Part shown: piece by piece, positions 2,516 through 63,359 of the stretch
Position numbering within the stretch: position 1 is the stretch's first letter
Layout: each line of letters begins with the position of its first letter
Virus record (IMG/VR): IMGVR_UViG_3300034072_001021
Coordinates: 62,001 to 126,000 of that record
Reading direction: 5' to 3' (one strand)
DNA: 64,000 nt
Notes under the pieces: generated by a model
What the model saw: the letters and a program-made list of their open reading frames with translations, nothing else
What the model was told of the DNA's origin: nothing
Databases searched by the model: none
Program-made: the position numbers and the translations under genes

Positions 2516-4093
2516 ATGACACAGAAAACCCAAGGTCAGGTCTCCGTGAAAGTACTGCTGAACGAGACCCAGAACTACCGCGCAAGCCTGGAAAGCCTCA
2601 TGGAACTCGGCCGTAGCCTGCTGAGCGTCCCGAGCCTGGAATCTTCTTCCGCCGACGCTTTCCAGAGCACTGCCGAACACATCCTGGAAGAAGCTGGTCA
2701 TCAAGAAGACCTTCAAGTGGTCGACGGCGTTGCTGAACCGGAAGCTCGTATCGAGCTGATCATGCAGGACGTCCTGGTTCCGCGCCTGACTGAAGTCGAG
2801 CAGATCGAGAAGTCTCTGGCTGAGAAAGCCGAAGACGAGATCCCCACTCCGTTCACCACCCGTGACGCTGAAACTGCAGCGGCCATGGAATCTCTGCAAT
2901 ACCGTACTGACATCCTGGACATCTTCGGCGAAAACATCCGCAACGTGAAGACCATTCTGTCCATGGAAGGTATGCCGGTGGACGTGGTTCGTCCGATGGT
3001 TGTCAGCATCGTCAAGCGAGCTGGTGAAGAAGCTGCTTCGTTCGGCGTCTCGCTGGAAAGCGTTGAGCAGACCCAGGTTCTGGGCGAAATGGCCGATGCT
3101 GTTCAACGTATCGAACAACTCGTCGAGAAAGCTCACGAGACCACCACTGCTCAAGCCGAGCGCATTCGTTCCGAAGCCGAAGCTATCGGCAGTGACGGCC
3201 AGGACAAGATCGGCGATCTGATCGAACGTCATCGCGCCGACAATCCGAGCGGTGCACATCTGGCAGCCGGTACGTCGGTAACCACCGTGGCCAGCGACAA
3301 TGCGTCGTCCGATACTTCGGAAGAAGACAACCAGCTCGATGCTGGTGATGGTACCGATGAAGGTACTGACGATCTCGATGCTGGCGCCGAAGGTGCTGAT
3401 GAGTCGGCTGACGCCAATCTCGATCTGGACAACGCTGAAGGCGGCGATGACCTGGCCGGTCTCGATGATGCCGCTGGTGCTGAAGGTACTGGTGAAGCAG
3501 ACGACACCAGTGGCGATGCCGGTGACGATGTTGACAACGTCGATGATCTGTCCGGTGGTGACGCAAGCGATGACACCGGTAGTGCTGACGATACTTCCGG
3601 CGATGACCTGGGTGGCGATGACACTGGCACTGACGACAATGTCGAAGGTGCTGATGACGTAGCAGGCACGGATGATGTCGACAACGCTGAAGGTACTGAC
3701 GGTACCGAAGGTGGCGATGACACCGATAACCAGGAAGAGGAAGAAGAGGAGTCGGACAATAAGGACGACAACAAAGCTTCTATCGAATCCATGGTTGCTC
3801 CGGTCACCATCGAACAAGCCGACTATCGCATCGGTGACGAAGCTGACCAGATCCGTGGTCATGTCCTGAACCTGCTGGCTCTGCTGAATCAGAACGAAAT
3901 GCTGACCGAAGCTGGTCAAGTGGCCCTGTCCAACATCCAGGCCAACGAAGGTAATAACTTCGTCCTGACTTCCGACATGTTCACCGATCGTGCCGCCGAA
4001 GTCCTGATCCGTCATTACGACACCTGGATCGCTGCTGCATTCCGTGATGGTGAAGCCAACCTGCGTGGCATGAGCATCCTGCTCGATAGCTAA
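2516..4093 (+). CDS. probable internal head protein with acidic low-complexity linker
   Basis: Strong phage codon bias; many S/A-x-E motifs (SLE, AME, SME, SVE, SIE) like phiKZ prohead-protease sites; D/G/A-rich tract. Confidence 0.7.
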   Translation: MTQKTQGQVSVKVLLNETQNYRASLESLMELGRSLLSVPSLESSSADAFQSTAEHILEEAGHQEDLQVVDGVAEPEARIELIMQDVLVPRLTEVEQIEKSLAEKAEDEIPTPFTTRDAETAAAMESLQYRTDILDIFGENIRNVKTILSMEGMPVDVVRPMVVSIVKRAGEEAASFGVSLESVEQTQVLGEMADAVQRIEQLVEKAHETTTAQAERIRSEAEAIGSDGQDKIGDLIERHRADNPSGAHLAAGTSVTTVASDNASSDTSEEDNQLDAGDGTDEGTDDLDAGAEGADESADANLDLDNAEGGDDLAGLDDAAGAEGTGEADDTSGDAGDDVDNVDDLSGGDASDDTGSADDTSGDDLGGDDTGTDDNVEGADDVAGTDDVDNAEGTDGTEGGDDTDNQEEEEEESDNKDDNKASIESMVAPVTIEQADYRIGDEADQIRGHVLNLLALLNQNEMLTEAGQVALSNIQANEGNNFVLTSDMFTDRAAEVLIRHYDTWIAAAFRDGEANLRGMSILLDS

Positions 4094-4136: not shown

Positions 4137-4189
4137 GTAAGGACTTTTGCCCCCTATAGTGTGTAGAGTTCTGCTCTTTTACAATTTAG

Positions 4190-4575
4190 CTACATCAAGA
4201 ATGCGCTTAATTGCGTACTGTTCGGGTTGGATCATCCTCTGACCCTAATGCCACCTCTCGATAGGTTGCAGACTAGGTGAGAGGTAACCCCTCTCACCTC
4301 CCTATTCGTTGCCCCCGATGAACTCGTCGTGATAGTCGGGGTGGTTGCATGTTCCAGCATCCTGCTTAATCTCGCTACCGGTAGGCTCTGTTGGTAAACG
4401 ATGGCCGTTGACGCGTTGCTCCGGCCGCTGCCATAGCGTTCATTTGCATCCGGCTGTGTAAATGAGCGTGACAAGTGTAAGTGCCCGCTCCTCATTTCCA
4501 CTTGTCGTAAAGTGCAGCCTCCAGTGATCTTCTCTTCGCCTAGAGATTAGATCACTGGGGGAAGTACTTTATTAT
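4190..4575 (+). ncRNA. candidate highly structured non-coding RNA
   Basis: Intergenic stretch with at least 7 consecutive helices; non-Watson-Crick pairs are mostly G-U on the + strand; no convincing ORF. Confidence 0.5.
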
Positions 4576-5640: not shown

Positions 5641-7818
5641 TTACGGAGCAGCCGGGTCCAGGTCTGCAGCAGCAGCGTCGAACGCAGCAGCCATCTGAGT
5701 CATCAGGTCACTGATGGCAGCAGTGTTGGCAGCGATAGCAGCGTCCTGGGCGTTCTGCTTGATCGACAGGGCAGCAGGAGTCACGAACTTGTCGGTAGAA
5801 GTACCGTCGATGACGTCCTGGTTGCTGGCGGTCAGGTCAGCAATGGTGCGACCTTGCAGTTTCGCCGAGTCCACGGCCTGGGCAGTGGCGTCCAGCTTGG
5901 TACCGATCTGGGTCATCAGGGTGTTGATGATGTCCGGATCGTTATTCAGCGCAGCAGCCAGCTCGTTGATGGTGTTCAGAGCTTCCGGTGCAGTGCCAGC
6001 CAGTTCGGCGATGGCAGCATCGATGGCGCCTTTCACGCTCAGCGAGGTGGTGTACTTGACATCGTCAGTACCAGCGATCACTTCAGCAGTGGTAGCTTTC
6101 GCCGCTACGAAGTTGTTGAACGCAGTCTGCAGAGCAGCCAGGTCAGTTGCAGCGCCGCTCTCGGCAGCTTCCACAGCCAGACGCAGCTGTTCCAGAACGG
6201 CGTCCAGAGCCTGCTGAGTCGGAGCCTGGGTGTCAGCATCCGGGAAGGTGACGGTGTTGGTACCGATGGCATCGCCAGCTTCCAGCTTGTCACCGATCTG
6301 GCCTTCCAGAGCAACGACGCGGCCGTCCAGAGCCGAGACAGCAGTATTGGTGCTGGCAATGGCGTTGGCGTTGGCAGTGGCCTGATCCTGCACACCCTGA
6401 ACGCTGGCTTGCAGAGCATCGCGTTCGCTGGTGATGCGGGCATCCAGCGCAGCGTCTTCCTGATCCAGACGCTCGACGATGGTCTTCAGGTTCTGAGCCG
6501 GGTTCTCACCGTCGGTAGCCAGTGCAACCGGGTTCAGACCCAGATCGCTTTCGCCAGCCTGCAGGAAGTTCGAACCTTCACCAACAGCAGCTTCCAGCGC
6601 ATCGATGCGCGCATCGATCGGAGTCAGGGCGGTGGCGATTTCAGCTTGTACCTGGGTCAGGTTCAGCTTGGTGTCGATGACGGTAACCAGAGCTGCAACA
6701 GCGTCTTCCTGGTTGGCCAGAGCGTCAGCCAGTTCCTTCAGGGTATCGAGGGCAGCCGGAGCGCCATCGACCACGCCGTTGATGGCAGCGTCAACCGCAG
6801 CCTTCAGGCCCAGGGCAGTGATGTACTTGGCATCGTCGGTACCGGCAACGGCTTCAGCCGAAGTGGCTTTGGCGGCGATGAAGTCGCTCAGTGCAGTCTG
6901 GACGGCAGTGATGGAATCGGCGTTGGTGCTGTCAGCAGCATTCAGAGCAGCGACCAGAGCGGTCAGAGTCTGACCACCGACGCTGTACTGACCGAAGTCA
7001 TCGGACTTCAGAACGACCTGGCTCAGGTCAACGCCAGCTTGCGCTTCGGCGATGATCTCGGCCTTGGTCTTGCCTTCGAGCTTGGCCGAGTCGGCAGCTT
7101 GTTCCAGCTTGCCGAGCTTGGAAGCCAGGCCAGAAGCCAGATCCGTACGGATAGCCGCTTCGCGACCGTCGGTGTAGGCATTGGCATCGGCTTCAGCAGC
7201 GTCTGCCTTGGCAGTGGCGTCGGTAGCAGCAGCAGCGATAGCAGCAGCCTGAGCAGCGTCGGCCTTGGCGGTGGCATCGTTGGCAGCGGTAACCAGAGCG
7301 GCAGCCAGATCGGTCTGCAGCTGGGCGATGGCAGCCTGGTTGTCACCGGCGATCTGCTGCAGAGCAGTCAGGGCATCGGGGTTGTTCTGCAGGGCAGCAG
7401 CCAGTTCCTGGATGGTGTCCAGGGTTTCCGGAGCGGTACCGACCTTGTCAGCCCAGAAGGCTTGCAGGTTGGCCGGGGTCAGGAACTTGTTGGTCAGCAC
7501 GCCAGCAACAGCTTCGACGTTGGTAGCGGTGCCGAAGTTGTCGACGTTACCCAGGCCGACTTGGGCCTTGGTTACGTTGTGCGGGTTGTCCTGGCGAGCG
7601 ATGAAGGCTTCGAATTCAGCGTTCAGGGCAGCCAGATCAGCAGCAGCGGCATCACCGATCAGAGCTTGTACTTCAGCGAGGGTCTTGCCACCCAGCTTGT
7701 TGGAGTCGAACGCTACGGCGTTGATGTCCAGCTTGCCATCGAGGCGACCACGAATGGCGGCGTTGAAGCTAGCCAGGGCGGTCAACAGATCCGTCAGTTT
7801 TTGAGCATCGAGAGACAT
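5641..7818 (-). CDS. tail-fibre-like virion protein (Ala-rich coiled coil, NPHxVTKAQVGL repeat)
   Basis: DNPHNVTKAQVGLGNVDN motif; repeated ATxxExxAGTDDxKY and APExLxTIxELAAAL units; DSxKLxG motifs. Confidence 0.8.
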   Translation of the reverse strand: MSLDAQKLTDLLTALASFNAAIRGRLDGKLDINAVAFDSNKLGGKTLAEVQALIGDAAAADLAALNAEFEAFIARQDNPHNVTKAQVGLGNVDNFGTATNVEAVAGVLTNKFLTPANLQAFWADKVGTAPETLDTIQELAAALQNNPDALTALQQIAGDNQAAIAQLQTDLAAALVTAANDATAKADAAQAAAIAAAATDATAKADAAEADANAYTDGREAAIRTDLASGLASKLGKLEQAADSAKLEGKTKAEIIAEAQAGVDLSQVVLKSDDFGQYSVGGQTLTALVAALNAADSTNADSITAVQTALSDFIAAKATSAEAVAGTDDAKYITALGLKAAVDAAINGVVDGAPAALDTLKELADALANQEDAVAALVTVIDTKLNLTQVQAEIATALTPIDARIDALEAAVGEGSNFLQAGESDLGLNPVALATDGENPAQNLKTIVERLDQEDAALDARITSERDALQASVQGVQDQATANANAIASTNTAVSALDGRVVALEGQIGDKLEAGDAIGTNTVTFPDADTQAPTQQALDAVLEQLRLAVEAAESGAATDLAALQTAFNNFVAAKATTAEVIAGTDDVKYTTSLSVKGAIDAAIAELAGTAPEALNTINELAAALNNDPDIINTLMTQIGTKLDATAQAVDSAKLQGRTIADLTASNQDVIDGTSTDKFVTPAALSIKQNAQDAAIAANTAAISDLMTQMAAAFDAAAADLDPAAP

Positions 7819-12906: not shown

Positions 12907-13275
12907 ATGGAAGGTATTACGGTTCACAAACTCAACGAGAAACTGGTAGTCAGCTTGTATGAGCTGCCTGGGTTCAAGCGTATGGGTGGTTGTGTGATCC
13001 GTGGTGAGGACGGTATGCGTACAGGCAATGTGAATGTCTACTATGCTGGGTCGTTCTTCCAATCTAAGTTGCAACCGGGGGATCGCGATAAAGCGATTAA
13101 AGCAGCCATGCGGTTGGCTCAGAACTTTGCTGTAAAGCAAGGCATCGGTCGCTACGCAACTCGACTCAATCTAACGTCAGAGTTGCGCAAAGACCCACAT
13201 CGAATTCCAGGTGTTAAGAAGGGGCAAGTTAATGTTCAAGACAAAGGCGCAGAAGCGGCGACTTGCTCAACTTGA
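12907..13275 (+). CDS. hypothetical protein
   Basis: AAGGGGG RBS; first gene of a divergent + strand cluster. Confidence 0.65.
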   Translation: MEGITVHKLNEKLVVSLYELPGFKRMGGCVIRGEDGMRTGNVNVYYAGSFFQSKLQPGDRDKAIKAAMRLAQNFAVKQGIGRYATRLNLTSELRKDPHRIPGVKKGQVNVQDKGAEAATCST

Positions 13276-13555
13276 TGAGCTAGTTGATCTGGTCATCAAA
13301 ATCACCGATGGGATCAAGGAGCATCGGTTCGAGACGGCTAGTGATGAAGAGTTCATGAGTCTTCATGGCGAATACACGTCCAAGCTCGATATATTAGCTG
13401 ACGAGATAATTCGGATGAATCCGATCAAGGCGTGGTTCTACACCGACTCTATGATCTCCCAGTTGATGAAAATCAAGGCATACAACCACATCATCGTCAT
13501 TTGGACGGGAGATGATTTCCAGAAACGTCTCCTGGTCAACCTTAACCAACAGTGA
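13232..13555 (+). CDS. hypothetical protein
   Basis: AAGGGG RBS before ATG 13232; overlaps the previous gene and ends just before dcd. Confidence 0.6.
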   Translation: MFKTKAQKRRLAQLDELVDLVIKITDGIKEHRFETASDEEFMSLHGEYTSKLDILADEIIRMNPIKAWFYTDSMISQLMKIKAYNHIIVIWTGDDFQKRLLVNLNQQ

Positions 13556-13562
13556 GTAAATC

Positions 13563-14384
13563 ATGGCAGTTAAAAGCGATCGCTGGATCATTCATCAGTG
13601 CACCAAACCTACCCACCAGATCTATGATCGCATGGGGATGCCTCAGGGATTGATCTCTCCACCGTACAGTAAGGAAGAACAAGAACTCATCAACAACTGG
13701 TGTGATGAGAACCAGCGTGACATTTACGGCAACAAACCGTACGCCGTGCCATTGCCGGAAGATGCCCTTCCTGACTGGAAGCCAATGATTGAAGGTTTCT
13801 TCGATCGTCCTGTACGGTACGTCGAGAAGACCAACGGTCTGCCAATAGATCTCCACGACGGTGTAGACCCGACCGGTGTTCTGCGCAAGGTCATCTCGTA
13901 CGGCACGTCGTCGTACGGATACGATGTTCGTCTGGCTGCTGATCCAACCCACATCAAAGTCTTCACCAACGTACATGAGCCGGAGATCGATCCGAAGCGC
14001 ATGAAGGAAACCAACTTCGGCACTCCCGCCATCCATGTGGATGAAGACGGCGCTCGATTCGTTTGGATTCCAGCCCACAGCTACATCCAGGGCCCGACGG
14101 TCGAGTACTTCCGTATCCCGCGTGACATCCTCGTGATCGTCCTCGGCAAGAGCACGTACGCACGTTCTGCTCTGATCTGTAATGTCACTCCCATCGAGCC
14201 AGAGTTCGAAGGTCATGTAGTGATAGAAGTCGCTAACGTGACCAGCAGTCCTGTACGGTGTTACTTAGACGAGGGCATTGCCCAATTCGTCTTCTTCCAA
14301 GGGGATGAAGAGTGCTTGCGTTCGTACAAAGACAAAGGCGGCAAGTACATGTACCAAACAGGCTTAACTCTTGCGAGGGTGTGA
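13563..14384 (+). CDS. dcd: dCTP deaminase
   Basis: SDRWI start, ISYGTSSYGYDVRL, VEYFRIP, GKSTYARS, NVTPIEPEFEG, EGIAQFVF motifs. Confidence 0.92.
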   Translation: MAVKSDRWIIHQCTKPTHQIYDRMGMPQGLISPPYSKEEQELINNWCDENQRDIYGNKPYAVPLPEDALPDWKPMIEGFFDRPVRYVEKTNGLPIDLHDGVDPTGVLRKVISYGTSSYGYDVRLAADPTHIKVFTNVHEPEIDPKRMKETNFGTPAIHVDEDGARFVWIPAHSYIQGPTVEYFRIPRDILVIVLGKSTYARSALICNVTPIEPEFEGHVVIEVANVTSSPVRCYLDEGIAQFVFFQGDEECLRSYKDKGGKYMYQTGLTLARV

Positions 14385-15094
14385 TGGGAGAAAAGACAGA
14401 CGTCCAAATGACCGGCTTTGTCCCGGTCAAAGGAGAGCCCCTCTGCGGGGCGTATGAGCTTAGACATACCGCGTCTGGTAAGGTCTACTACGGATCGACT
14501 GGAGACATCGAGCGTCGTCGTAGAGAACATCTCAATAGCTTGCGGCGAGGAGATCACCACAATCATGCTCTTCAAGGTTTGGTCAACGAAAATCCCGAGA
14601 TTGAATTGGTGTTCCATCGGACAGATTCCATAGAGTCGGCCAGAGCGATCGAGCAAGGTCATATTGGCTCGGAGGCTGGCCTTAACGTGGCTATAGATGC
14701 CGTAACTAGCGTCAATGGACTCATGGCAATCCCAGATGTTGTCAAGCGTCATTCTGAAAAGCTAATAGGCAACACTAACGCAAAAGGATCTAAGCACTCT
14801 GAAGAATGGAAGGCTAAGAAATCCGAATCCATGAAGGGCAATACTAACTTGCTCGGTCATAGGCACAGCGAGGAGACACGCCGCCAATACTCAGAGGTCA
14901 GGAAGGGTCGTGTCAATGATCCTGACCATGTCGCCAGATCTGCTGAAGGGCGTACCAGAGAAAGAGTAGTTATCGATGGCGAAACCTACCAAAATGCGGC
15001 TGCCGCAGGTAAAGCTGTAGGAATGACCGCCGGCGGTGTTAAGAAACGCTGTCGATCCGATAAATTTCCAAATTGGAGTCTTGTTCCGAAATGA
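14384..15094 (+). mobile_element. free-standing GIY-YIG homing endonuclease with NUMOD3 repeats and C-terminal HTH
   Basis: GAY...YYGST variant of GIY-YIG, RRREH, catalytic E (AIEQ), GLN; HSEEWKAKKSES and HSEETRRQYSE repeats; TGATG-coupled to dcd; flanked by a duplicated dcd 3' end. Confidence 0.85.
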
Positions 15095-15255
15095 TCGAAG
15101 TAGCCAACGTGACGAACAGTCCGGTGCGCTGCTACTTGGATGAGGGTATTGCTCAATTCGTCTTCCTGCAGGGTGACGAAGAGTGCCTGCGCTCCTACAA
15201 GGACAAGATGGGCAAATATCAAGGCCAACGCGGTCTCACACTGGCAAAGGTGTAA
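15091..15255 (+). pseudogene. dcd: orphaned second copy of the dcd 3' end (54 codons)
   Basis: 46/54 aa identical to the dcd C-terminus at 14220-14384; both copies are 165 nt; keeps the KYQGQ motif. Confidence 0.85.
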
Positions 15256-15257
15256 TC

Positions 15258-15467
15258 ATGCGTAAATCGTCACAGTACCCTGGCCTGCATCACGCAGACC
15301 AACTGATTGCCGAAGGTAATGACAATCAGCGGCAGGTAATGATCGAGGGTAAGCCGCGCTGGGTTGCGTGTCGGCCAGAAGGTTATCCATCGTTGCGTAA
15401 TCGTTTCCGCATGGCCTGGAAAGTTTTCACTGGAAAAGCGGATGCGCTTGTATGGGAGCAGCAATGA
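15258..15467 (+). CDS. conserved small phage hypothetical protein
   Basis: AAAGGTG RBS; W..CRP...RF..AWKVFTGKADAL pattern; ATGA-coupled to the next gene. Confidence 0.65.
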   Translation: MRKSSQYPGLHHADQLIAEGNDNQRQVMIEGKPRWVACRPEGYPSLRNRFRMAWKVFTGKADALVWEQQ

Positions 15468-15883
15468 GCAAACAACGTAAGAAGCAATCAGTACAAGCTA
15501 CTGTGTGCCTGAGTCACAACCTGCACGCCTCCGGGCGGGTTTATCCAGAGGTCTTTCAGAAGCTTGCCGAGAAGGCCGCTAAAGAAGGTCTTCTGGTCGA
15601 GTTTGGTACGCCTCGGCTTCCCGAGACTGCTCATGCCAACGAGCGTCTCGATCGTTACCGTCATGTCGATAGAAGTCGCGTGTGCGCACGCATTACCGAC
15701 ATCTGGACTGAAGGCGATCAGGTCGTGATGGGCAAGATTCAGACCGAAGGCCCGATGGCTCAGTTCGTTGAGAACGCCATCAATAGCAACGGCGGCGATA
15801 ACCTTCGTTTCAGTGTCCGCAGTATGGTCAAGGGTAACAACGAGATCGAGCTGTTCACGTACGACCTCGTCAATTACGGTTGA
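15464..15883 (+). CDS. prohead-protease-fold protein (T4 gp21/phiKZ gp175-like), probably inactive
   Basis: GRVYP, VEFGTP, RVCARI, EGP, FSVRS and TYDLV appear in the order of the prohead protease motifs. Confidence 0.6.
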   Translation: MSKQRKKQSVQATVCLSHNLHASGRVYPEVFQKLAEKAAKEGLLVEFGTPRLPETAHANERLDRYRHVDRSRVCARITDIWTEGDQVVMGKIQTEGPMAQFVENAINSNGGDNLRFSVRSMVKGNNEIELFTYDLVNYG

Positions 15884-15888
15884 TCGTG

Positions 15889-16131
15889 ATGGACGGCTAT
15901 TTCGTCTTCATGAACGTAATGGCATGTGTCCTTGCGGCGTCCATCGTCGCAAGGCATCACGTCAGTGAGTACAAGGAGATCCACGCTAGGTGTCCTGTGT
16001 TTACTCGAGGCGAATACGTCTACGACTCAGTCGATGGATTTATAATCCAGACGTTAGCCTTAGCGATCCTATTCTGCATCAGCCTGTCTCTTCTCAGGCT
16101 GGCAATCCCCATCTATCTGTTCGGAGAGTGA
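15889..16131 (+). CDS. small membrane protein
   Basis: Two hydrophobic segments; operonic position. Confidence 0.55.
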   Translation: MDGYFVFMNVMACVLAASIVARHHVSEYKEIHARCPVFTRGEYVYDSVDGFIIQTLALAILFCISLSLLRLAIPIYLFGE

Positions 16132-16132
16132 T

Positions 16133-17074
16133 GTGAGCAAACATTCCATGGCTGTGGTCTATCACGGCAATTGCAATGATGGTACAGCTTCTGCATGGGC
16201 GGCATGGAAGATACTCGGTCCTGAAGCCGAGTACATTGCATGGCGTTACGGTGATCCAGTTCCACAAGTCGATGGGATGGTTGTTTTCGTTGTCGACATC
16301 TCTCCCAAACCCGAAGAAGTCGAACAACTCCGTGCATCGGCTAAGGCAGTGGTCATCGTAGATCACCATGATTCTAGCCTGCGCAAGATCAGTGATCTGC
16401 CTCGGGTAGACAAGTACTCGGACTTCATGAAGATCGTCGACAAGTATGACGGAATCGAGGCTCCGGTATACCTGATGATGGACATCGAGCGATCAGGCGC
16501 CATTCTGTCGTGGTTGTTCTTCAATGATCATGGTCTGGAATACACAGGTCCTGTCCCTACAGCGCTGACACTGATCGACGACTACGATCGCTTCACCAAG
16601 AAGTATCCCGAGACTGCTGCGTTCAACGCCTGGCTGGCTGGCTCCGGACGTTACATCGATAACTTCGATCGTCACGTCAACGAAGACGGCACACCCAAAT
16701 ACACAGCACTGTCGGCTGGCAAGTTGCTAGTCAAACAACTGCAACGGCAAGTGAATGACATCATTCGCAACTACGTACGTCGGGTGGAATGGCGTGGTTA
16801 TAAGGTTGCTCTTGTAAACGCACCGTTCACCATTCGAAATGAAGTGGCGGATGAACTGAACCAAACCACCGATGTCGACTTTGTGCTGGTTTACAGCATC
16901 CGGTCTGACAAAGTGGTGTTCAGTGCACGTGGCAAGGACAAAAAGATCAATCTCAGTATCCTCGCTGAAGAGTTTGGTGGTGGTGGTCACGAAGACGCTG
17001 CTGCATTCTCCATTCCGCTGGATAACCTGTCCCTGATGTTTGCGTTGGGGATTGCTAAAACAACAACTTTCTAA
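16133..17074 (+). CDS. DHH/DHHA1 phosphoesterase (NrnB/nanoRNase-like)
   Basis: YHGNCNDG, VDIS, IVDHH, SGAILSW, DDYD and GGGGHEDAAAF motifs. Confidence 0.88.
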   Translation: MSKHSMAVVYHGNCNDGTASAWAAWKILGPEAEYIAWRYGDPVPQVDGMVVFVVDISPKPEEVEQLRASAKAVVIVDHHDSSLRKISDLPRVDKYSDFMKIVDKYDGIEAPVYLMMDIERSGAILSWLFFNDHGLEYTGPVPTALTLIDDYDRFTKKYPETAAFNAWLAGSGRYIDNFDRHVNEDGTPKYTALSAGKLLVKQLQRQVNDIIRNYVRRVEWRGYKVALVNAPFTIRNEVADELNQTTDVDFVLVYSIRSDKVVFSARGKDKKINLSILAEEFGGGGHEDAAAFSIPLDNLSLMFALGIAKTTTF

Positions 17075-37196: not shown

Positions 37197-40163
37197 ATGT
37201 CTACTGAATCAACTGTCCGGCGGTTTCAGAAATTCGCATCTGCAAGAACTATTCCAACAGAAGTAAAAGCGGCGATTTCTAAACTGGGCGCTGACCCACA
37301 TGGCAATTCTGGAAGTCGCAATAACATCAGGTTGCCCGATGGTCGTGTGATGGCACATATTGCCAACCAGACCATCGGTAACATTCAGGATGCTCGGAAC
37401 CTGTTCCAAGTCCTTCCTGACATGGATTATGCGCGGCAGCTGCTTATTTCTGCGACGCTATCTCCTGGTGATCTTACGGACACTAAAGTTCTGTACAGTA
37501 TCGAAGACCGGGCGGTGGATAGCAACCTTGCAGGGCCGCTTCTTCGCAACGTCCAGGAGTTCTTCGATAACTCCTATAGAATTAGGTCGCTTCTTCACCC
37601 GATCCTGAACGACACGATGTTCGAGACAGGGTCATACCCAATTCTGGTTATGCCCGAGTCCTCGATTGACCGAATCATCAATTCGGACAACTACAACGGG
37701 ATCTCGATGGAGTCGGCTATTCAGCAACTCGATGGTCACATCAATGCTGAAACCGATCGCGATGGCAACTACTTGCCTTGGGGTGTGCTGGGTAACCCAG
37801 CTACAGCGCCGGCAACTGCCAACTCCTACTCTGGGGTGAGCTTCGAAAGCCTGAAGATCGACAACTATCAGCGTGACGTCAAGCTCAATGATCTCAATGT
37901 GAGCTTCGAGTCGATGATCTCCAATGTCAAGGGCACCTACCCTGACGAAGAGATCGGTAAGTTGAAGACGTCTCTGGAATCACTGTCCAAGACAGCCCAG
38001 AAGATGATCACCGAGAAAGGTTCCACCATCCAAGTCACTGACAACATGAACGTGTTGAAACGACCGATGATCGTGGAAACCCGTCGTCGACTGGCTGTGC
38101 GTCGTATTTACGGCGGCCGCCTGCACGCTAAGGCTTCTCTGGAATCCAAGGCTAAAGCAGGTGATCAAGACGCCATGCGTAACTTGGCTGCAGTGGAGAA
38201 ATCTCTGTACACCAAGCGCAATTACAAGCACATCCCTGTTCAACCTGTGATGACTCATAAGCAGACCAAGACAGAAACCTACGGCCATCCGTTGGTTCTG
38301 CATCTTCCGTCTGAGTCTGTCATCCCAATTCACGTCCCAGGCAACCCTGCTGAGCACGTGGGCTACTACGTCCTTCTGGACATCGATGGTAACCCTATCT
38401 CGATTGCTGACATGACGTCCTACATGGACGACATTCGCAACCAGATGAACAGTGCCGACAGTTATAGCAGCCAGATCATCAATCAGGCTCGCCGTGGCTT
38501 TGAAGGCATGGGTGGGATTCAGAACGAAATCATCAATGAGATGTCTCGTGTGCACTCTGAAGCGGTAGAGGCCGATCTTCTGTCTCGTCTGCGTGCAGGT
38601 GCATTGTCTGGTAACTACGAACTGGGTAAAACCGAGAACATCAACCGCATCATGTTGGCCCGTCACCTAAAGGGTCAGAAAACCATGATGTTGTTCGTCC
38701 CGGCTGAGATGATGATCTACATCGCATTCGATTACAACGAGTACGGTGTCGGTAAGTCGATTCTGGAAGACGGCAAGATCCTCGGTTCGATCCGTGCTGC
38801 GCTGATGCTGTCCAACACCCTGGCCACCATCAACAATGCCGTAGGTGGCAAGACCATCAACATCGAGCTTGATCCTGATGACGAAGATCCGGTAAGTACG
38901 GTGGAGTTCTTGCTCTCCGAACACGCCAAGGTCAACGCCCAAGGGTTCAGCCGTATTGTTGGGTCGACTCACCCACTGGGTCTGGCTGACCAGATTCAGA
39001 ACCACGGCGTGAACGTAGTGGTCACTGGTAACTCGCGTTATCCTGAAACCAAGTACGACGTGAACCAACGTGAGGGCACTGCCCGACCGATTGACGTCGA
39101 CATGGAGAAGATGATGCGTGATCGTCACATCCAGATGTTCGGGCTGAGTCCGGAGATGATGGAGGGCGTGAACCAGTCGGACTTCGCTACTACAGTCGTT
39201 CAAAACAACCTGATGCTTCTCAAGCGTGTGATCCACAACCAAGAGAAATTTGAGCCATTCCTGACAGACTTCGTCCGTCGTTATGTGCTTAACTCAGGCG
39301 TCTTCATTGACGAGATGCGGCAGATCATCAAGGACAACATCAAGTACCTTCCAGATGACCTGCGCGATGACAAGACCATGGACGAAGCCACTAAGGTGGA
39401 TGAATTCATGTACCGGTTCATCAGCTCCCTGACTGCCACACTGCCGTCACCTGAAGTAGGTGACATCAAGAAAGCAATGGAGCAGTTCCAGGATTACACC
39501 GATGCGCTGGATAAGGTCATCGATGCATACCTCAGTGAAGAAATGTTCGCTACCGACACCACTATTGGCATGGAGGAAGTCCTCCCGAATGTCAAAGTCG
39601 TGGTCAAGGCAGAGTTCCAGCGTCGTTGGCTACGTAAGTACAACATCATGCCGGAACTGGACGTCTTCAACACCGTAGATGAGGAAGGCGATGATACGCC
39701 TGCGTTCAGTTTGCTGGAAGCCAGTGCAGATCACCTCGACGGCCTGAACAACTCGATTGCCGAGTACATTCAGAAAGTCATTGAGGCGGCTAACCTCCGT
39801 GCCAAGAAACTGAAGCCCATCAATGAAGCTAAAGAAGCACTGACTACTGCGAAAGATGAAGCAGGTGGCACGCTCTCTGGTGGAGGTGGTGACAACTTCG
39901 GTGGAGATGACACCGGCGGTGGTGATGATCTAGGTGGCGGTGACGACCTGGGTGGTGAGGGTCTTGATGGCCTTGACGATACAGGTGGTGACGATCTTCC
40001 TGCGGATGATCTTGAAGCAGGTGATGAAGCCGGCGATGAGACTAACGCTGAAGAAGAGGAAGGTACCGAAGGTACTGACGAAGGTGGTGAGAACACCGAT
40101 ACTCCTGCGGATGATGAAGCAGGTGGTGACGGTCTCGACATCCCTGAAGCGCCTAAGGTGTAA
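37197..40163 (+). CDS. probable portal protein (phiKZ gp129-like) with acidic disordered C-tail
   Basis: 988 aa; LFQVLPD...Q.LIS..LSP, LPSESVIP.H.PG.P..H.GY, Y.AFDYN..G.GKS motifs; synteny after the gp128-like gene. Confidence 0.75.
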   Translation: MSTESTVRRFQKFASARTIPTEVKAAISKLGADPHGNSGSRNNIRLPDGRVMAHIANQTIGNIQDARNLFQVLPDMDYARQLLISATLSPGDLTDTKVLYSIEDRAVDSNLAGPLLRNVQEFFDNSYRIRSLLHPILNDTMFETGSYPILVMPESSIDRIINSDNYNGISMESAIQQLDGHINAETDRDGNYLPWGVLGNPATAPATANSYSGVSFESLKIDNYQRDVKLNDLNVSFESMISNVKGTYPDEEIGKLKTSLESLSKTAQKMITEKGSTIQVTDNMNVLKRPMIVETRRRLAVRRIYGGRLHAKASLESKAKAGDQDAMRNLAAVEKSLYTKRNYKHIPVQPVMTHKQTKTETYGHPLVLHLPSESVIPIHVPGNPAEHVGYYVLLDIDGNPISIADMTSYMDDIRNQMNSADSYSSQIINQARRGFEGMGGIQNEIINEMSRVHSEAVEADLLSRLRAGALSGNYELGKTENINRIMLARHLKGQKTMMLFVPAEMMIYIAFDYNEYGVGKSILEDGKILGSIRAALMLSNTLATINNAVGGKTINIELDPDDEDPVSTVEFLLSEHAKVNAQGFSRIVGSTHPLGLADQIQNHGVNVVVTGNSRYPETKYDVNQREGTARPIDVDMEKMMRDRHIQMFGLSPEMMEGVNQSDFATTVVQNNLMLLKRVIHNQEKFEPFLTDFVRRYVLNSGVFIDEMRQIIKDNIKYLPDDLRDDKTMDEATKVDEFMYRFISSLTATLPSPEVGDIKKAMEQFQDYTDALDKVIDAYLSEEMFATDTTIGMEEVLPNVKVVVKAEFQRRWLRKYNIMPELDVFNTVDEEGDDTPAFSLLEASADHLDGLNNSIAEYIQKVIEAANLRAKKLKPINEAKEALTTAKDEAGGTLSGGGGDNFGGDDTGGGDDLGGGDDLGGEGLDGLDDTGGDDLPADDLEAGDEAGDETNAEEEEGTEGTDEGGENTDTPADDEAGGDGLDIPEAPKV

Positions 40164-59331: not shown

Positions 59332-60906
59332 TCAGTTCATCCAGTACGCCGGCCAGACTTGACGCCACGTGCCGTCTACAGTCGCATACAGTCGACCACC
59401 TGCATTGAGCAGTTGGATTTCCTGCGTGTTACCGAGAACGGGTTCGTTAGCACCTTCCGCCACATGGCCACTCCAAGTGGCAGGCCAGAGTTGTTTCCAC
59501 TGGCCGCTGATGTAACCCTGGAGCTTACCATTCACCACACGAAGGCTGGTATTGGTAGCAGTGTTCAGGCGGACATAACGGTTGTCATGGTCACCCGAGT
59601 TGATGTGGTCGAACATGGCCCCAGCTAACAGCAGAGTCGAATCGCTGTTGAGGTTTCGTGCACGAGTCACAGCGTTGGGGATGTTACTCAGACCAACCTG
59701 TGCTTTAGTGGTTTGGTGCGGGTTGTTGGTGTCCGAAATGTGGGCGTTCAGCAAATTGCCCGCAATGAACATGATCGCTTCTTTAGTCCGTTGTGGGGTC
59801 ATGAAGCGGTTGCTTGCAGATCCCAGTTCGGCTTCGGCTTTGGTAGCCGTTTGGAAGTTATCAACCAGACCTAGACCCACCTGAGCTTTGGTGGTAGCGT
59901 GCGGGTTGTTGGTGTCAGCTGCGTGCGCATTGAACGCGTTGCCAACATGGAACATGATTGCCTGGTAAGTACGCAGGGGTGTCATGAATTTGTTGTTGAC
60001 AGTTTGTGACTCAGCCTCTGCCCGCATGGCCGTAGCAAAGTTATCCACCATGTCGAGACCAACTTGCGCCTTGGTCACTTCATGGGGGTTATCTTTACGA
60101 GCCTCATGGATCATGGTGATTTCGGTTGCCACACGAGTCGACAGAAGGTTACTGCCGTACGGTGTCATGAACCGATCCATCAGTACACCAGCGCTAGCCT
60201 CAGCATCACTGGCAGTCAGGAAGTTATCGACGTTGCCGAGACCTACCTGCGCCTTAGTGGTACGGTGTGGATTATTGAAGTCGTCAATGTGGTTGTCCAC
60301 TTTGGTATCGACTGCAACAATCTGAGCTTCCAGCTGATCACGAATGTACTGCATCTGTGCACGCAGTTCATCATGAGACGCCTCGTCACCTACCAGGATC
60401 GCATTGGTAATGCGCTCCAGCTGCCAGGTCACGTACTCCCAGCCGTAGGTGTCACCGATATCATGGATGTGGGGTGCCGGTGGATAAGCCGTCGGACGAC
60501 CAAGAACAGAACCCCACTTGATGGGACGTTCATCCAGATCCAGTTCTTCGATCAGAGCAGCCAGCGCGCCGAGGTTCCACGAATACTCACCACCGATCAC
60601 ACGGTAGTTCATCGTGATACGAATCGGAGCATTGACTTTCAGAACGACAGCACACTGGACGTCTTTACCACTACGAAGACTAGCTTGCTGGAACGGCTGC
60701 ACCAGCAGATAGTCGTCGACCGGGCGCAGAGGTTCGAGGGTGTTGGCGTCGAAGATCTCGAACGATTCGGTGAAGAAAGGGCCTGCCATAGGAACGAACA
60801 CACGTGCCGTGTTCGTTGTGATATCTCGGACCTCACCGACGATTTCGTTCGTCGGCGAAGTACCATTCAGATCCAGCGGATACTGAATGATCGGTGGTAG
60901 ACTCAT
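59332..60906 (-). CDS. tail-fibre-like virion protein
   Basis: YPLDLNGTSPTNEI N-terminus; four NPHxxTKAQVGL repeats; duplicated W.Q.WPA.W C-terminal module. Confidence 0.85.
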   Translation of the reverse strand: MSLPPIIQYPLDLNGTSPTNEIVGEVRDITTNTARVFVPMAGPFFTESFEIFDANTLEPLRPVDDYLLVQPFQQASLRSGKDVQCAVVLKVNAPIRITMNYRVIGGEYSWNLGALAALIEELDLDERPIKWGSVLGRPTAYPPAPHIHDIGDTYGWEYVTWQLERITNAILVGDEASHDELRAQMQYIRDQLEAQIVAVDTKVDNHIDDFNNPHRTTKAQVGLGNVDNFLTASDAEASAGVLMDRFMTPYGSNLLSTRVATEITMIHEARKDNPHEVTKAQVGLDMVDNFATAMRAEAESQTVNNKFMTPLRTYQAIMFHVGNAFNAHAADTNNPHATTKAQVGLGLVDNFQTATKAEAELGSASNRFMTPQRTKEAIMFIAGNLLNAHISDTNNPHQTTKAQVGLSNIPNAVTRARNLNSDSTLLLAGAMFDHINSGDHDNRYVRLNTATNTSLRVVNGKLQGYISGQWKQLWPATWSGHVAEGANEPVLGNTQEIQLLNAGGRLYATVDGTWRQVWPAYWMN

Positions 60907-60938
60907 GGAGTTACTCCACTGGTAAATGATTCATTGAG

Positions 60939-60960
60939 GATGGGGTGTTTCCACCCCATC
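60939..60960. terminator. hairpin between the two fibre genes
   Basis: GATGGGGTG-TTTC-CACCCCATC. Confidence 0.5.
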
Positions 60961-60965
60961 TCTGT

Positions 60966-63359
60966 TTACGCGAAGTAATTCGCAAGCGCGTCGTCAATAA
61001 CAACGCCCAGCTCGTCGCATAGCGCATCGATGGAAGTTTCCACCTTAGCAGCGGTGCTCGCCGGTGTCATGAACCGATCGGTAGCAGTGCCTGCAATCGC
61101 TTCTGCGTTAGACGCATCCGGATAGTTGCTGACGCTGCCAAGACCAACTTGAGCTTTGGTAACCTGGTGAGGGTTATCTGTGCGCTGACTGAATGAGATC
61201 AGTTGATCGATCTCGGCGCTGCCTTCTTTGAGATGAGGGCAGTACACGATATTCGCTGGCTCGACAGTGATCAGCTCAGACATCTGAGTCGGGGCATCCA
61301 TCGGATTATGGATGAAGCGACGGTTCGACAGCTCAGTGATGTTCAGTCGGTTACGGCACCCGCTGGACTTCAACCAGATCTCCAATTCGGAGGTCAGGTT
61401 AGTACCCACTTGCCGTACACCAATCTCGAAAGGATTGCTTACCGGGGTGAGTTCTTTCAGGAGCAGGCTCTTGATGACCATGACCAGGTCACCCTGACCA
61501 TCGATGGTATCGCGCACAGTACTGATCTCAACCAGCACCGTGTGGTGTTTGAATTCACCTTGCGAGTTATCGTCACGACCACCAGTGATCAAGAGGGTGG
61601 TGTCTGCCTGGAGGTTATCCGGAGTCGCAGCCACTTTACCGATCCGCATCCAGTGTTCACCAGGAACAACCAACTCACCGAAATCATCTTCCAGCTCAGT
61701 GATCTCCGGCACGATGAACTGGATCGATCCACCATCAACTACCTGAGAGATCTCAGCCAACACTTCGTTGTAAGTCTTACCGTCCAGTTTGGCACTGTCG
61801 GCTGCTTTGCCGGTCAGGATATCGTTTTTGGCTTCCTCGAAGGTTTTGCCGCCGAACTTAGTCGAATCACCAGCGAGGATGGTAGAGATCCAGCCCTGCA
61901 GTGCTTCTTGATCCAGGCCGAATACCAACGCCGAGTCAGCAGCCACACCGTTGTCATCGAGCTTGTTGGCTAGCAATCCATCCATGATCTCGATGCTATA
62001 TGCACCTACTTGAGCAGCCGTCACTTGGTGAGGGTTGTCAAGATCGGACACGTGAGCGTTCGACATATCGCCAACAAGGGCGTTGATGGTACGGCGAGTA
62101 GCCAGCGGAGTCATGTAACGGTTATCCAGTGTTGCATCTTCGGCTTCTGCCTGACTTGCAACCGGATAGTTCATTACGAACTCGAGACCTACCTGAGCTT
62201 TGGTGGTGCCGTGTGGGTTCTGATCGTTGGCAATGTGGTCTGCCACACCATCGCCCAGCGTTTCGGTCATAACCAAAGCCAACAGTCGTGGCGTGATAAT
62301 GCCGTTGTCGCCGACACCAGCGATCGCATCTTCGTCAGAAGCAATACCGATGTTTGGTACGTTACCCAAACCTACCTGTGCACGAGTCACGTTGTGCGGG
62401 TTCGATGTATTCGCGGCGTGAGCCTGGAATGCGGTTTGCACAATGGCGACGATCGCTTCACGGGTACGAGCAGGTGTCATGAACCGAGCGTTGGATGCAC
62501 CAGCTTCCGCTTCCGCTTGGCTAGCAACAGCATAGTTCTGGACGTTGCTCAACCCTACCTGAGCCTTGGTGGTCTGGTGAGGATTGTTGGTGTCGTCTTT
62601 GTGCGCGTTCAGTGCATTGATCGCAATTGCTTCGATCGCCTGACGGGTGCGCAGCGGGGTCATGAACCGAGTGTTCAGAGTGCCTGACTCGGCTTCCGCA
62701 GGAGCAGCTGTGGCGTAGTTATCAACCAAACCAAGACCCACTTGAAACTTGTTGACTTCGTGTGGGTTGTTCTTGTTGTTGACGTGATCGGTCATGCCAC
62801 CTTCATTCTTCTGAATGATGGCACGTTCGATATCGCCCAGGCGATCCTCGACTTCCGACATACCGACGAAATCGTCGATATTGAAGTCATGGTTCACCAC
62901 CGGGAACTGGTGAGGCAACTCAACCATTTGTTCCCAGGTAGCAATGCGTGGGTTCTGCGTGACGTTAGCCAGCAGCTCGGTCATTGCTTGGTGATCGAGG
63001 ACCCACTCGCCACCCAGAGTCTGGTACTCCATGCGGAGCTGACCAGCCAGAGCACGATCGTAGAACGAAATCGCACCGTAGACCGGCTTTCCAATGGTAT
63101 GCGAGGCGTGAGCGAAGTGATAACCGAAGTTAAAATGCTCGCCCTCTACCAAGAGGGTACCGCCCAGAGGATTGTTTACGTTCGCACCGGCCGGATAGAG
63201 GCGCAGACGAACGCTCTCTGCATAAAACGGACCGCTACGCGGAACGATGTAGTAGTGGTCAAACATCCCACGCGATTGGATCGCTTGGGTCTCCGTAACC
63301 TTGTTGGTCACCGCGACACCCGTCGGGTCAAAAGGGTACTGCGGAATAGTTGTACTCAT
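60966..63359 (-). CDS. tail-fibre-like virion protein
   Basis: GGAG RBS before MSTTIPQYPFDPTG; six NPH...QVG repeats; DSxKxxGKT motifs; N-terminal domain paralogous to the 59332 gene. Confidence 0.85.
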   Translation of the reverse strand: MSTTIPQYPFDPTGVAVTNKVTETQAIQSRGMFDHYYIVPRSGPFYAESVRLRLYPAGANVNNPLGGTLLVEGEHFNFGYHFAHASHTIGKPVYGAISFYDRALAGQLRMEYQTLGGEWVLDHQAMTELLANVTQNPRIATWEQMVELPHQFPVVNHDFNIDDFVGMSEVEDRLGDIERAIIQKNEGGMTDHVNNKNNPHEVNKFQVGLGLVDNYATAAPAEAESGTLNTRFMTPLRTRQAIEAIAINALNAHKDDTNNPHQTTKAQVGLSNVQNYAVASQAEAEAGASNARFMTPARTREAIVAIVQTAFQAHAANTSNPHNVTRAQVGLGNVPNIGIASDEDAIAGVGDNGIITPRLLALVMTETLGDGVADHIANDQNPHGTTKAQVGLEFVMNYPVASQAEAEDATLDNRYMTPLATRRTINALVGDMSNAHVSDLDNPHQVTAAQVGAYSIEIMDGLLANKLDDNGVAADSALVFGLDQEALQGWISTILAGDSTKFGGKTFEEAKNDILTGKAADSAKLDGKTYNEVLAEISQVVDGGSIQFIVPEITELEDDFGELVVPGEHWMRIGKVAATPDNLQADTTLLITGGRDDNSQGEFKHHTVLVEISTVRDTIDGQGDLVMVIKSLLLKELTPVSNPFEIGVRQVGTNLTSELEIWLKSSGCRNRLNITELSNRRFIHNPMDAPTQMSELITVEPANIVYCPHLKEGSAEIDQLISFSQRTDNPHQVTKAQVGLGSVSNYPDASNAEAIAGTATDRFMTPASTAAKVETSIDALCDELGVVIDDALANYFA

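What the first reader, a model, noticed from the sequence alone, without database searches (positions are those of the whole stretch)
14220..15255. Homing endonuclease carrying a recoded replacement 3' end of dcd, leaving the native end orphaned
Seen: the last 165 nt of dcd (14220-14384) recur after the GIY-YIG gene (15091-15255). 46/54 residues are identical, yet 27 of those 46 codons differ synonymously. The in-gene copy uses codons rare in this genome (ATA, TTA twice, AGG, CGG, GGG) and reads KYMYQ. The downstream copy has native-style codons and the family-typical KYQGQ. The junctions are TGATG and ATGA couplings, and I see no intron structure. Known: free-standing homing endonucleases spread by intronless homing, and in fungal mitochondria GIY-YIG modules carry foreign 3' gene ends. 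Inference: an intron-free, intein-free way to invade an essential gene, where the element repairs the ORF with a divergent cleavage-resistant end. The orphan keeps an open frame with its own ATG and could still be translated.
Basis: partly seen in the sequence, partly recalled or inferred. Interest (0 to 1): 0.8.

Follow-up and report, generated by a model that had tools for sequence, protein, structure and literature searches.

The report
Homing endonuclease with replacement gene end
In a jumbo phage, a selfish endonuclease gene sits inside the dCTP deaminase gene together with a foreign copy of that gene's last 54 codons, so the gene stays whole while its own end is left downstream; this trick was known from fungal mitochondria, and I found no phage report of it.

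Summary
The two 165-nt copies share 120/165 nt and 46/54 residues, with 27 synonymous codon differences. They lie 871 nt apart and flank an I-TevI-like GIY-YIG endonuclease gene (HEG).

- The closest element-free relative (L002) has dcd followed directly by the next gene. Its tail matches the orphan better than the in-gene copy (135 vs 116 of 165 nt).
- All five known close HEG relatives sit behind an 'A-type' tail (KGGKYMYQTGLTLARV). All four intact orphans there are 'B-type'. The A/B split has 97/98 support.
- A before/after pair, L030 and L021, shares one backbone. The L021 orphan equals the L030 native tail at 163/165 nt, while its in-gene tail matches at only 128/165.
- The in-gene tail and the HEG share atypical codon use.

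No intron or intein is present.

Corrections: the replacement end is a natural allele of another dcd lineage, not a designed recoding. The orphan is probably a relic or homology arm, since one relative lacks its start codon and another has deleted it. Cleavage resistance is untested.

The closest known analogue is the fungal mitochondrial 'mORF' gene hybrid.

The parts
13563..14213 (+). Resident 5' part of dcd (codons 1-217)
   Evidence: Pfam DCD. 89% nt identity to element-free L002. Codon score 0.757, typical of the genome.
14214..14384 (+). Imported 'A-type' replacement end of dcd (codons 218-273 plus stop). The part repeated downstream is 14220-14384.
   Evidence: 70% nt identity to the L002 tail, against 89% for the 5' part. 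Falls in the A clade with all tails that precede a type-1 HEG (97/98 support). Codon score at the 5th percentile, like the HEG. The left edge at codon 218 (CAT, His) is inferred from the L021/L030 and L008/L009 breakpoints and the EG-H-V signature.
14375..14386 (+). GAGGG Shine-Dalgarno-like motif inside the last dcd codons (the AGG Arg codon), then the TGATG stop/start overlap
   Evidence: Read from the sequence. GCGAGGGT(G/A)TGA, followed at once or with a 1-nt overlap by the HEG ATG, is conserved in all five type-1 loci. Its function as a ribosome-binding site is inferred.
14384..15094 (+). Free-standing GIY-YIG homing endonuclease gene (236 aa): GIY-YIG domain, NUMOD3 linker, I-TevI-type DNA-binding domain
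   Evidence: Pfam PF01541, PF07460 and PF20987, all above curated cut-offs. PHROG 314 'homing endonuclease', E 4e-20. Aligns to the I-TevI catalytic domain 1mk0 (E 3e-5), with a weak match to the DNA-binding domain 1i3j (E 0.16). dN/dS about 0.08-0.09 in the two pairs where dS is not saturated.
15091..15255 (+). Orphaned 'B-type' dcd end (codons 220-273 plus stop). Its ATG is formed at the junction and overlaps the HEG stop (ATGA).
   Evidence: 82% nt identity to the L002 tail. Groups with the L003 and L023 orphans, then with L002. Typical codon use. Homology to dcd begins exactly at the junction.
15258..15467 (+). Next backbone gene (69 aa, PHROG 21988, unknown function). It marks the original end of the dcd locus.
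   Evidence: Follows the orphan in WIN, L003 and L023, and a homologue follows dcd directly in L002.

Best explanation
The window comes from a roughly 259-kb jumbo phage contig whose nearest isolate is Pseudomonas phage pPa_SNUABM_DT01. Its dcd gene has been invaded by a two-part cassette. The parts are the last ~56 codons of a dcd from another lineage of the same phage family (the A-type tail) and, immediately behind them, an I-TevI-like GIY-YIG homing endonuclease gene.

Shown here:
- The cassette sits at codon 218-220. It keeps dcd full length and under purifying selection, and displaces the resident B-type tail, which survives as a 54-codon orphan.
- Element-free relatives have dcd followed directly by the next gene.
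- The orphan, not the in-gene tail, matches them.
- The A-type tail is linked to the endonuclease across backbones whose dcd 5' parts are only 63-77% identical.
- The junction between the HEG end and the orphan is the same in seven of the eight loci that keep an intact orphan.

Inferred:
- The endonuclease cuts B-type dcd of co-infecting element-free phages within about 50 bp upstream of codon 220.
- The break is repaired from the element-bearing genome. The conserved dcd 5' part is the left homology arm and the orphan is the right arm.
- Tail plus endonuclease are therefore copied in precisely, and the recipient's own tail becomes the new orphan.
- The A-type tail, with its constant Glu/Asp218-to-His change, is the cleavage-immune allele.
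- The endonuclease is translated by coupling to dcd (GAGGG, then TGATG).

The orphan probably has no protein function.
For: Empty sites: DT01 (L001) and L002 have dcd directly followed by the next gene.

Which copy is native: B vs the L002 tail is 135/165 nt, and A vs the L002 tail is 116/165, while the dcd 5' part is 89% identical.

Before/after pair L030/L021:
- 8 mismatches in dcd nt 1-651, then 39 in the last 171 nt.
- The orphan equals the native tail at 163/165 nt.
- 3 kb downstream are 98.8% identical.

Linkage: the database holds five close HEG clusters (69-100% identity), one of them the window's own. All five lie behind an A-type tail. Only 4 of the 40 full-length dcd relatives listed carry that tail.

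Tail tree: the A/B split has 97/98 support. Placing WIN_in and WIN_orph as sisters is rejected (p-AU 4e-5).

Codon use: A tail 0.577 and HEG 0.588, against B 0.728 and the dcd 5' part 0.757.

Precise re-insertion: the last ~75 nt of the HEG are 100% identical between the window and L006, L015 and L023. The orphans directly after them are only 73-93% identical.

Same-sample polymorphism: in run X5 the flanks have depth 200-550 and the element about 25.

HEG identity. More distant HEG relatives (48% and 40% identity) also lie directly 3' of dcd in other jumbo phages, without an orphan.
Against: - No cleavage, homing or expression data exist.
- The window's nearest empty-site relative is only 89% identical in dcd, so the event is less clean here than in L021/L030.
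- The window is a three-way mosaic. Upstream it resembles L002, while the orphan and orf69 resemble L003/L023. 'Native' is therefore relative to the downstream backbone.
- In L020 the in-gene A tail matches its own clade's HEG-less member (154/165 nt to L012) and the orphan is the foreign part. Ordinary recombination between element-bearing and other genomes therefore also spreads the arrangement.
- Type-2 cassettes share nearly the same DNA-binding domain but stand in front of A-type orphans (L006, L011). The A-type sequence downstream of codon 220 is thus not in itself unrecognisable.
- No close donor was found. The best match is 85% for the tail and 75% for the HEG.
Confidence: 0.8

Rival explanations
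1. Reverse polarity in this genome. The in-gene A tail is the resident end, and the unit that arrived is HEG plus B-type orphan plus downstream genes. It would have arrived by ordinary homologous recombination with an element-bearing phage.
For: L020 looks like this. Its dcd 5' part is 98% identical and its in-gene tail 154/165 identical to HEG-less L012, while its orphan is B-type and its downstream genes differ. The window's orphan and orf69 are closer to L003/L023 than to L002.
Against: In the window the A tail is the outlier against the closest dcd backbone (70% vs 89%). It shares the HEG's atypical codon use. H218 and the A tail are absent from L002. The L021/L030 pair shows that the tail comes in with the HEG.
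Confidence: 0.1
2. The orphan is kept because it is expressed and useful, for example as a 54-aa peptide translated by ATGA coupling that modulates the dCTP deaminase trimer.
For: The frame is intact in 8 of 9 element-bearing lineages, and an ATG is present in 7. GGAG lies 12 nt upstream. Orphan-to-orphan dN/dS is 0.00-0.12; for example, WIN vs L003 has 15 differences, all synonymous.
Against: L021 has no start codon (GTA) and L018 has deleted all but 9 codons. The low dN/dS is expected if each orphan was a working tail until its own invasion, as in L021/L030, and HEG ends identical up to the junction stand before diverged orphans. The ATG is a by-product of the HEG's AAA-TGA end. Single orphans carry changes never seen in working tails: P11L, A52E, G45R.
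Confidence: 0.08
3. A group I intron (or other spliced or bypassed element) spans about 14214-15090, so mature dcd would carry the B tail.
For: Joining 14219 to 15091 would be in frame. Phage HEGs are often intron-borne.
Against: No Rfam match at E<=1 over 13000-16500. There is no non-coding sequence between the three ORFs. The in-gene tail is a complete, conserved, selected dcd end with its own stop (dN/dS 0.01-0.04). No joint was seen in four runs (these are probably DNA, so this is weak evidence).
Confidence: 0.02
4. A local tandem duplication of the dcd end diverged in place, with a HEG landing between the copies. Alternatively, the arrangement is an assembly artefact.
For: Direct repeats flank an insert.
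Against: A tree holding the two window copies together is rejected (p-AU 4e-5). dS between A and B is saturated. The copies each have closer relatives in other genomes. Independent assemblies give identical junctions.
Confidence: 0.01

Closest known systems
Fungal mitochondrial mobile endonuclease ORFs (mORFs) that create gene hybrids: Allomyces macrogynus atp6; Glomus sp. atp6, atp9, cox2 and nad3; Rhizopus atp9; Mortierella cox2 (PMC3630166 and the work it cites). Partial atp6 and cob C-terminal duplications next to GIY-YIG or LAGLIDADG ORFs in Endoconidiophora (PMC6279837).
   Same: An endonuclease ORF is inserted in the 3' part of a conserved gene. A foreign C-terminal copy lies in phase with the resident 5' part, and the native C-terminus is displaced downstream. 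The native copy is closer to relatives than the inserted one: 91-98% vs 64-81% in Glomus, 82-99% vs 70-78% here.
   Different: The host is a dsDNA jumbo phage, not an organelle. The endonuclease is not fused in frame; it is a separate ORF coupled by TGATG. There are population-level signs of repeated precise re-insertion. A sister cassette at the same codon carries a whole replacement gene.
Free-standing GIY-YIG and HNH homing endonucleases of T4-like phages (SegB, SegF, SegG, MobE): 'intronless homing' with co-conversion of flanking markers (PMC2988022, PMC2330249, PMC2790892)
   Same: The HEG lies between genes, has an I-TevI-like modular build, targets a neighbouring conserved nucleotide-metabolism gene, and drags flanking sequence along. 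The more distant relatives L033 and L034 have exactly this plain arrangement next to dcd.
   Different: The T4-phage review I searched (PMC2988022) mentions no duplication of the target gene. There the cut gene is simply converted to the donor allele. Here the converted end and the resident end coexist, and the insertion point lies inside the coding sequence.
Other HEG-split or HEG-protected phage genes: the mobE insertion that splits Aeh1 nrdA into 'genes in pieces' (cited in PMC2988022), and the mobA plus gene 60 bypass cassette of T4 (from my own knowledge, not checked here)
   Same: A HEG has entered a conserved gene without an intron or intein, and gene function is rescued by an accompanying sequence feature.
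   Different: In those cases the gene is split or bypassed. Here the reading frame is completed by a spare copy of the gene's end.
HEGs at boundaries of genetic exchange between phages (Barth, Dunham and Seed 2023, PMC10448857)
   Same: The locus is a sharp mosaic boundary. Identity between the window and L003 jumps from 50-85% upstream to 87-98% downstream of the HEG. L008 and L009 diverge from codon ~215 on.
   Different: That work does not describe target-end duplication.

Membership tests
GIY-YIG homing endonuclease, I-TevI-like | N-terminal GIY-YIG nuclease domain with GIY, YIG and the catalytic Arg | tested here: met
   PF01541 scores 28.2 bits (cut-off 22.6). The alignment to I-TevI 1mk0 pairs GAY/GIY, VYYGS/VYVGS and the Arg that is mutated in 1ln0. 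The Glu and Asn further on were not covered by the alignment.
GIY-YIG homing endonuclease, I-TevI-like | Linker with NUMOD3 repeats and a C-terminal helix-turn-helix DNA-binding domain | tested here: met
   PF07460 scores 26.5 bits (cut-off 20.4) and PF20987 scores 32.6 bits (cut-off 27). A weak alignment to 1i3j includes the SDKFPNW/SDKW-NW motif.
GIY-YIG homing endonuclease, I-TevI-like | Site-specific cleavage of the element-free allele and over-transmission in mixed infection | not testable with these tools
   This needs the enzyme and phage crosses.
Homing element in general | Presence/absence polymorphism at one exact site between close relatives | tested here: met
   L021 vs L030: an 881-nt insert in flanks that are 98.8% identical (3 kb downstream) and differ at 8 of the first 651 dcd nt. 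L002 and DT01 are empty. In run X5 the depth is 25 over the element and 200-550 over the flanks.
Free-standing HEG (intronless homing) | Not embedded in an intron or intein | tested here: met
   No Rfam match. ORFs abut with 1-4 nt overlaps. dcd, HEG and orphan lie in three different frames.
Free-standing HEG (intronless homing) | Co-conversion of flanking markers with the HEG | tested here: met
   The A-type tail is linked to the HEG in 5 of 5 lineages on divergent backbones. Tail swaps occur between backbones that are 96% identical (L008/L009).
Mitochondrial-type mORF gene hybrid | Foreign C-terminal copy in phase with the resident gene, endonuclease ORF next, native C-terminus displaced downstream | tested here: met
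Mitochondrial-type mORF gene hybrid | Endonuclease ORF in phase with or fused to the host gene (true of some described cases), in an organellar genome | tested here: not met
   The HEG is a separate ORF in another frame, behind a stop codon (TGATG). The genome is a phage. I therefore file this as 'works like', not as a member.
Group I intron | Conserved ribozyme core (P3-P8) and splicing | tested here: not met
   The Rfam 15 evalue scan of 13000-16500 gave 0 matches, and no non-coding space is available. Splicing itself could not be tested: the runs labelled RNA are probably DNA, and no joints were seen.
Intein | In-frame insertion without stop codons, with splicing blocks | tested here: not met
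   A stop codon lies at 14382-14384, and the HEG is in a different frame.

The most novel reading that the evidence does not exclude
Phages have a third route, besides introns and inteins, by which homing endonucleases colonise the inside of conserved genes. The route is a self-contained 'exon-replacement' cassette that brings its own immune copy of the gene's end, or in the sister cassette a whole spare gene. The displaced native end would be retained because it serves as the built-in right-hand homology arm, making each new insertion precise to the nucleotide. One dcd codon has been colonised by at least two such cassette types that exchange endonuclease domains.
Probability: 0.5. Interest if true: 0.7.

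Novelty: new variant of a known kind. Interest (0 to 1): 0.6.

Why it matters
- It shows how a selfish nuclease can sit inside a phage metabolic gene at no cost to the host gene and without any splicing machinery.
- It gives a concrete, testable example of HEG-driven mosaicism in jumbo phages.
- The junction predicts where the enzyme cuts, and the A/B tail pair predicts which few bases give immunity. Together these offer a natural pair of sensitive and resistant targets for an I-TevI-type enzyme.
- It is a warning for annotation and phylogeny. Hybrid genes and 54-codon 'hypothetical proteins' next to HEGs are footprints of such events, and the hybrid tail will mislead dcd trees.

Tried and rejected
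- Megablast of the locus against GenBank phages found nothing. Only protein-level searches found relatives.
- The Rfam scan for introns was empty.
- The promoter/terminator scan found nothing on the + strand in the locus, and overall no more than shuffles give.
- Comparing the window with L003 did not work as a test for a recently shared cassette. The cassette is only about 75% identical there, no higher than the flanks, so it shows old or independent acquisitions rather than a recent transfer.
- A test for relaxed constraint in orphans (residues never seen in working tails) was inconclusive: 0.42 per orphan vs 0.83 per working tail, with the working set being more diverse.
- dN/dS could not separate 'functional orphan' from 'recently orphaned', and dS is mostly saturated.
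- Junction-pattern scans of IMG/VR and JGI metagenomes gave only the already known contigs plus one 1.1-kb fragment.
- Runs labelled RNA were probably DNA, so splicing could not be tested.
- Literature searches for a phage example of HEG-linked duplication of a gene end found none in the held library. That is not proof of absence.
- No close donor of the window's cassette was found.
Full report
**1. What is in the window**

The locus on the + strand holds three abutting ORFs:
- dcd, 13563-14384 (273 aa).
- A 236-aa ORF, 14384-15094.
- A 54-codon ORF, 15091-15255.

They overlap by TGATG and ATGA and lie in three different frames. Pfam calls the first a dCTP deaminase. It calls the second a GIY-YIG nuclease with a NUMOD3 linker and an I-TevI-type DNA-binding domain, all above curated cut-offs. 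PHROGs and the I-TevI crystal-structure sequences agree.

The last 165 nt of dcd (copy A) recur as the third ORF (copy B). They share 120/165 nt and 46/54 residues, with 27 synonymous codon differences.

**2. Where the window comes from**

It is part of IMG/VR contig 3300034072_001021, 259 kb long. The nearest isolate is Pseudomonas jumbo phage pPa_SNUABM_DT01, with dcd 74% identical. Nothing in GenBank phages is close at the DNA level.

**3. Empty sites**

In DT01 (L001) and in the closest metagenomic relative L002, dcd is followed directly by the next backbone gene, with no endonuclease and no second tail. L002 is 99% identical in the RNR alpha protein and 89% identical in dcd 5' nucleotides.

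Against L002:
- The dcd 5' part is 89% identical.
- Copy B is 82% identical (135/165 nt; 4 residue changes).
- Copy A is 70% identical (116/165 nt; 9 residue changes).

A codon-adaptation score built from the window's 38 long ORFs puts copy A at the 5th percentile, together with the endonuclease gene. Copy B and the dcd 5' part are typical. The in-gene end therefore looks imported and the orphan looks resident.

**4. The same architecture elsewhere**

A search of 5.8 billion proteins found 13 clusters of this endonuclease. I fetched the surroundings of most of them.

*Type 1.* The five closest clusters (69-100% identity) are WIN, L003, L018, L020 and L021. All lie directly behind a dcd whose tail is 'A-type' (…KGGKYMYQTGLTLARV).
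- Four have an intact 54-codon orphan behind the endonuclease, always 'B-type' (…K(M/A)GKYQGQ(R/T)GLTLA(K/R)V).
- L018 keeps only the last nine orphan codons.
- The L021 orphan has lost the start codon.

*Backbones.* The dcd 5' parts of these genomes are only 63-77% identical to each other, so the backbones differ.

*Tail tree.* A tree of 18 tails splits A from B with 97/98 support. The window's orphan groups with the L003 and L023 orphans and then with element-free L002. Forcing the window's two copies together is rejected (p-AU 4e-5). This excludes a local duplication.

*Frequency.* Only 4 of the 40 full-length dcd relatives listed carry the A-type end. Its presence in front of every type-1 endonuclease is therefore linkage, not chance.

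**5. A before/after pair**

L030 (element-free) and L021 (element-bearing) share one backbone.
- The first 651 nt of dcd differ at 8 sites.
- From nt 652 (codon 218, GAA to CAT) to the stop they differ at 39 of 171 sites.
- The L021 orphan equals the L030 tail at 163/165 nt. Both differences lie at the junction.
- The next 3 kb are 98.8% identical.

An 881-nt block of foreign tail plus endonuclease has entered at codon 218-220 and pushed the native tail downstream. It also shows that the foreign block begins about 6 nt before the repeat. All A-type alleles read EG-H-V where B-type alleles read EG-(E/D)-V.

**6. Evidence for repeated, precise insertion**

The junction …CCGAA|ATGATCGA… is identical in seven of eight loci with an intact orphan. 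The last ~75 nt of the endonuclease gene are 100% identical between the window and L006, L015 and L023. The orphans that follow immediately are only 73-93% identical, and they differ mostly at synonymous sites.

That pattern is expected if the cassette has recently moved among genomes and each orphan is the recipient's own, until-then functional tail. It also explains the very low dN/dS among orphans without requiring that they be functional.

In run X5 the flanks are 8-20 times deeper than the element. Element-free relatives therefore dominate a sample in which the element-bearing form is also present.

**7. Mechanism**

*Shown:*
- The architecture.
- The foreign origin of the in-gene end.
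- Its linkage to the endonuclease.
- The constant junction.
- Purifying selection on the hybrid tail (dN/dS 0.01-0.04) and on the endonuclease (dN/dS 0.08-0.09 in the two unsaturated pairs; dN 0.09-0.26 with saturated dS in the others).

*Inferred:*
- The enzyme cuts B-type dcd within about 50 bp upstream of codon 220. This interval is set by the L021/L030 left breakpoint. It is compatible with the I-TevI habit of cutting about 25 bp from the insertion site (that habit is my own knowledge plus PMC2988022).
- Repair uses the dcd 5' part and the orphan as homology arms.
- The A-type allele is immune.
- The endonuclease is translated by coupling. The rare AGG codon at the end of the A tail supplies a GAGGG Shine-Dalgarno motif 4 nt before the ATG, and this is conserved in all type-1 loci.

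**8. Complications**

- A-type tails are native in some lineages: element-free L008, L012 and L032. The replacement end is therefore a natural allele, not a purpose-made recoding.
- In L020 the in-gene tail matches its own clade, and the orphan plus downstream genes are the foreign part. Ordinary recombination thus also spreads the arrangement.
- The window itself is a mosaic. RNR and the dcd 5' part resemble L002, while the orphan and orf69 resemble L003/L023.
- HEGs are known to mark such exchange boundaries in phages (PMC10448857).

**9. A second cassette at the same codon (type 2)**

It occurs in L006, L011, L015 and L023, and partly in L010. There:
- dcd is cut after EPEFEG and ends in a short alien tail (249 aa in total).
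- A complete foreign 190-aa dcd follows.
- Next comes an endonuclease with a different catalytic half but nearly the same DNA-binding half.
- The same junction and an orphan follow, which is A-type or B-type.

More distant endonuclease relatives (48% and 40% identity) also sit directly 3' of dcd in other jumbo phages, one of them on a contig with a PhiKZ-type capsid gene. These have no orphan. That is the classical free-standing arrangement from which the cassette probably arose.

**10. Comparison with what is known**

The closest match is the fungal mitochondrial mORF 'gene hybrid': Allomyces atp6, and Glomus atp6, atp9, cox2 and nad3 (PMC3630166). Partial atp6 and cob duplications next to GIY-YIG ORFs are also reported (PMC6279837). 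The logic and the diagnostic pattern are the same, with the native copy close to relatives and the inserted copy divergent.

It differs in three ways. The host is a phage. The endonuclease is a separate, translationally coupled ORF. There is population evidence for precise re-insertion.

Phage 'intronless homing' (Seg and Mob enzymes; PMC2988022, PMC2330249, PMC2790892) shares the enzyme type and co-conversion. No duplicated gene end is described in the T4 review, or in the other phage papers my searches returned.

I therefore rate it a new variant of a known kind.

**11. Verdict**

Intron, intein, local duplication and artefact are excluded or very unlikely. Cleavage specificity, immunity of the A allele, homing, and any role of the orphan remain to be tested.

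Noticed in passing
L006:4001-6244, L023:2146-4387, L011:3501-5747, L015:2078-4321 (related loci): A second cassette sits at the same dcd codon. The resident dcd is truncated to 249 aa with an alien tail (KLTLQITN…STTDL). A complete foreign 190-aa dCTP deaminase follows, then a 241-aa GIY-YIG HEG whose catalytic half differs but whose DNA-binding half and junction match the window's, then an orphan tail (A- or B-type). L010 has the truncated dcd plus the 190-aa dcd, but no HEG or orphan was detected.
   Followed up: partly
L006:5358-6080: The type-2 endonuclease gene in L006 carries an in-frame stop (…RERVVIDG*TYQN…), so it is a decaying HEG copy.
   Followed up: no
L033:2723-4229; L034:2584-4244; L035:201-944: More distant relatives of the endonuclease (48% and 40% identity) also lie immediately 3' of a dcd gene in other jumbo phages (L034 has a PhiKZ-type capsid gene nearby). 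There is no orphan tail. This points to a long-standing association of this HEG lineage with dcd.
   Followed up: partly
L018:1168-1200: Behind the HEG stop only the last nine codons of a B-type tail remain (QRGLTLARV*). The orphan can therefore be lost by deletion.
   Followed up: yes
L008 vs L009, locus 4150-4330: Two element-free genomes are 96% identical in the dcd 5' part but carry different tails (125/165 nt) and unrelated downstream genes. Divergence starts about 12 nt before codon 220, and a 50-nt identical patch lies inside the tail. This is a tail swap or recombination scar without a HEG.
   Followed up: partly
window 14380 (run X5): One contig of run X5 follows the window's A-type tail up to 14380. 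It then continues with a different stop, ribosome-binding site and gene start (…GTTTAGGAGACGAACATGGCAAAGAAAAAG…). This is an A-type dcd end with no HEG behind it, in the same sample.
   Followed up: no
window 15960-16129: A contig in run X5 skips 168 nt between the head-protease-like gene (15452-15883) and the DHH-family gene (16133-17074). This spacer, which holds an 83-codon ORF, is also absent in L006 and so is variable.
   Followed up: no
window 15258-15467 and 15420 onward: orf69 is 94% identical (protein) to L003 and L023 but only 38% identical to the L002 homologue. DNA identity to L003 rises to 95-98% from about 15420 on. This is a further mosaic boundary just downstream of the orphan.
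   Followed up: partly
window 59600-62860 and 7430-7680; also 3140-3860, 5800-7470, 39820-40130: A six-frame self-comparison shows families of diverged repeated protein modules of about 40-200 aa, probably repeat-domain structural proteins.
   Followed up: no
window 14747-14917: There is an internal repeat inside the endonuclease gene (two NUMOD3-like units, 47% identical over 34 aa).
   Followed up: no
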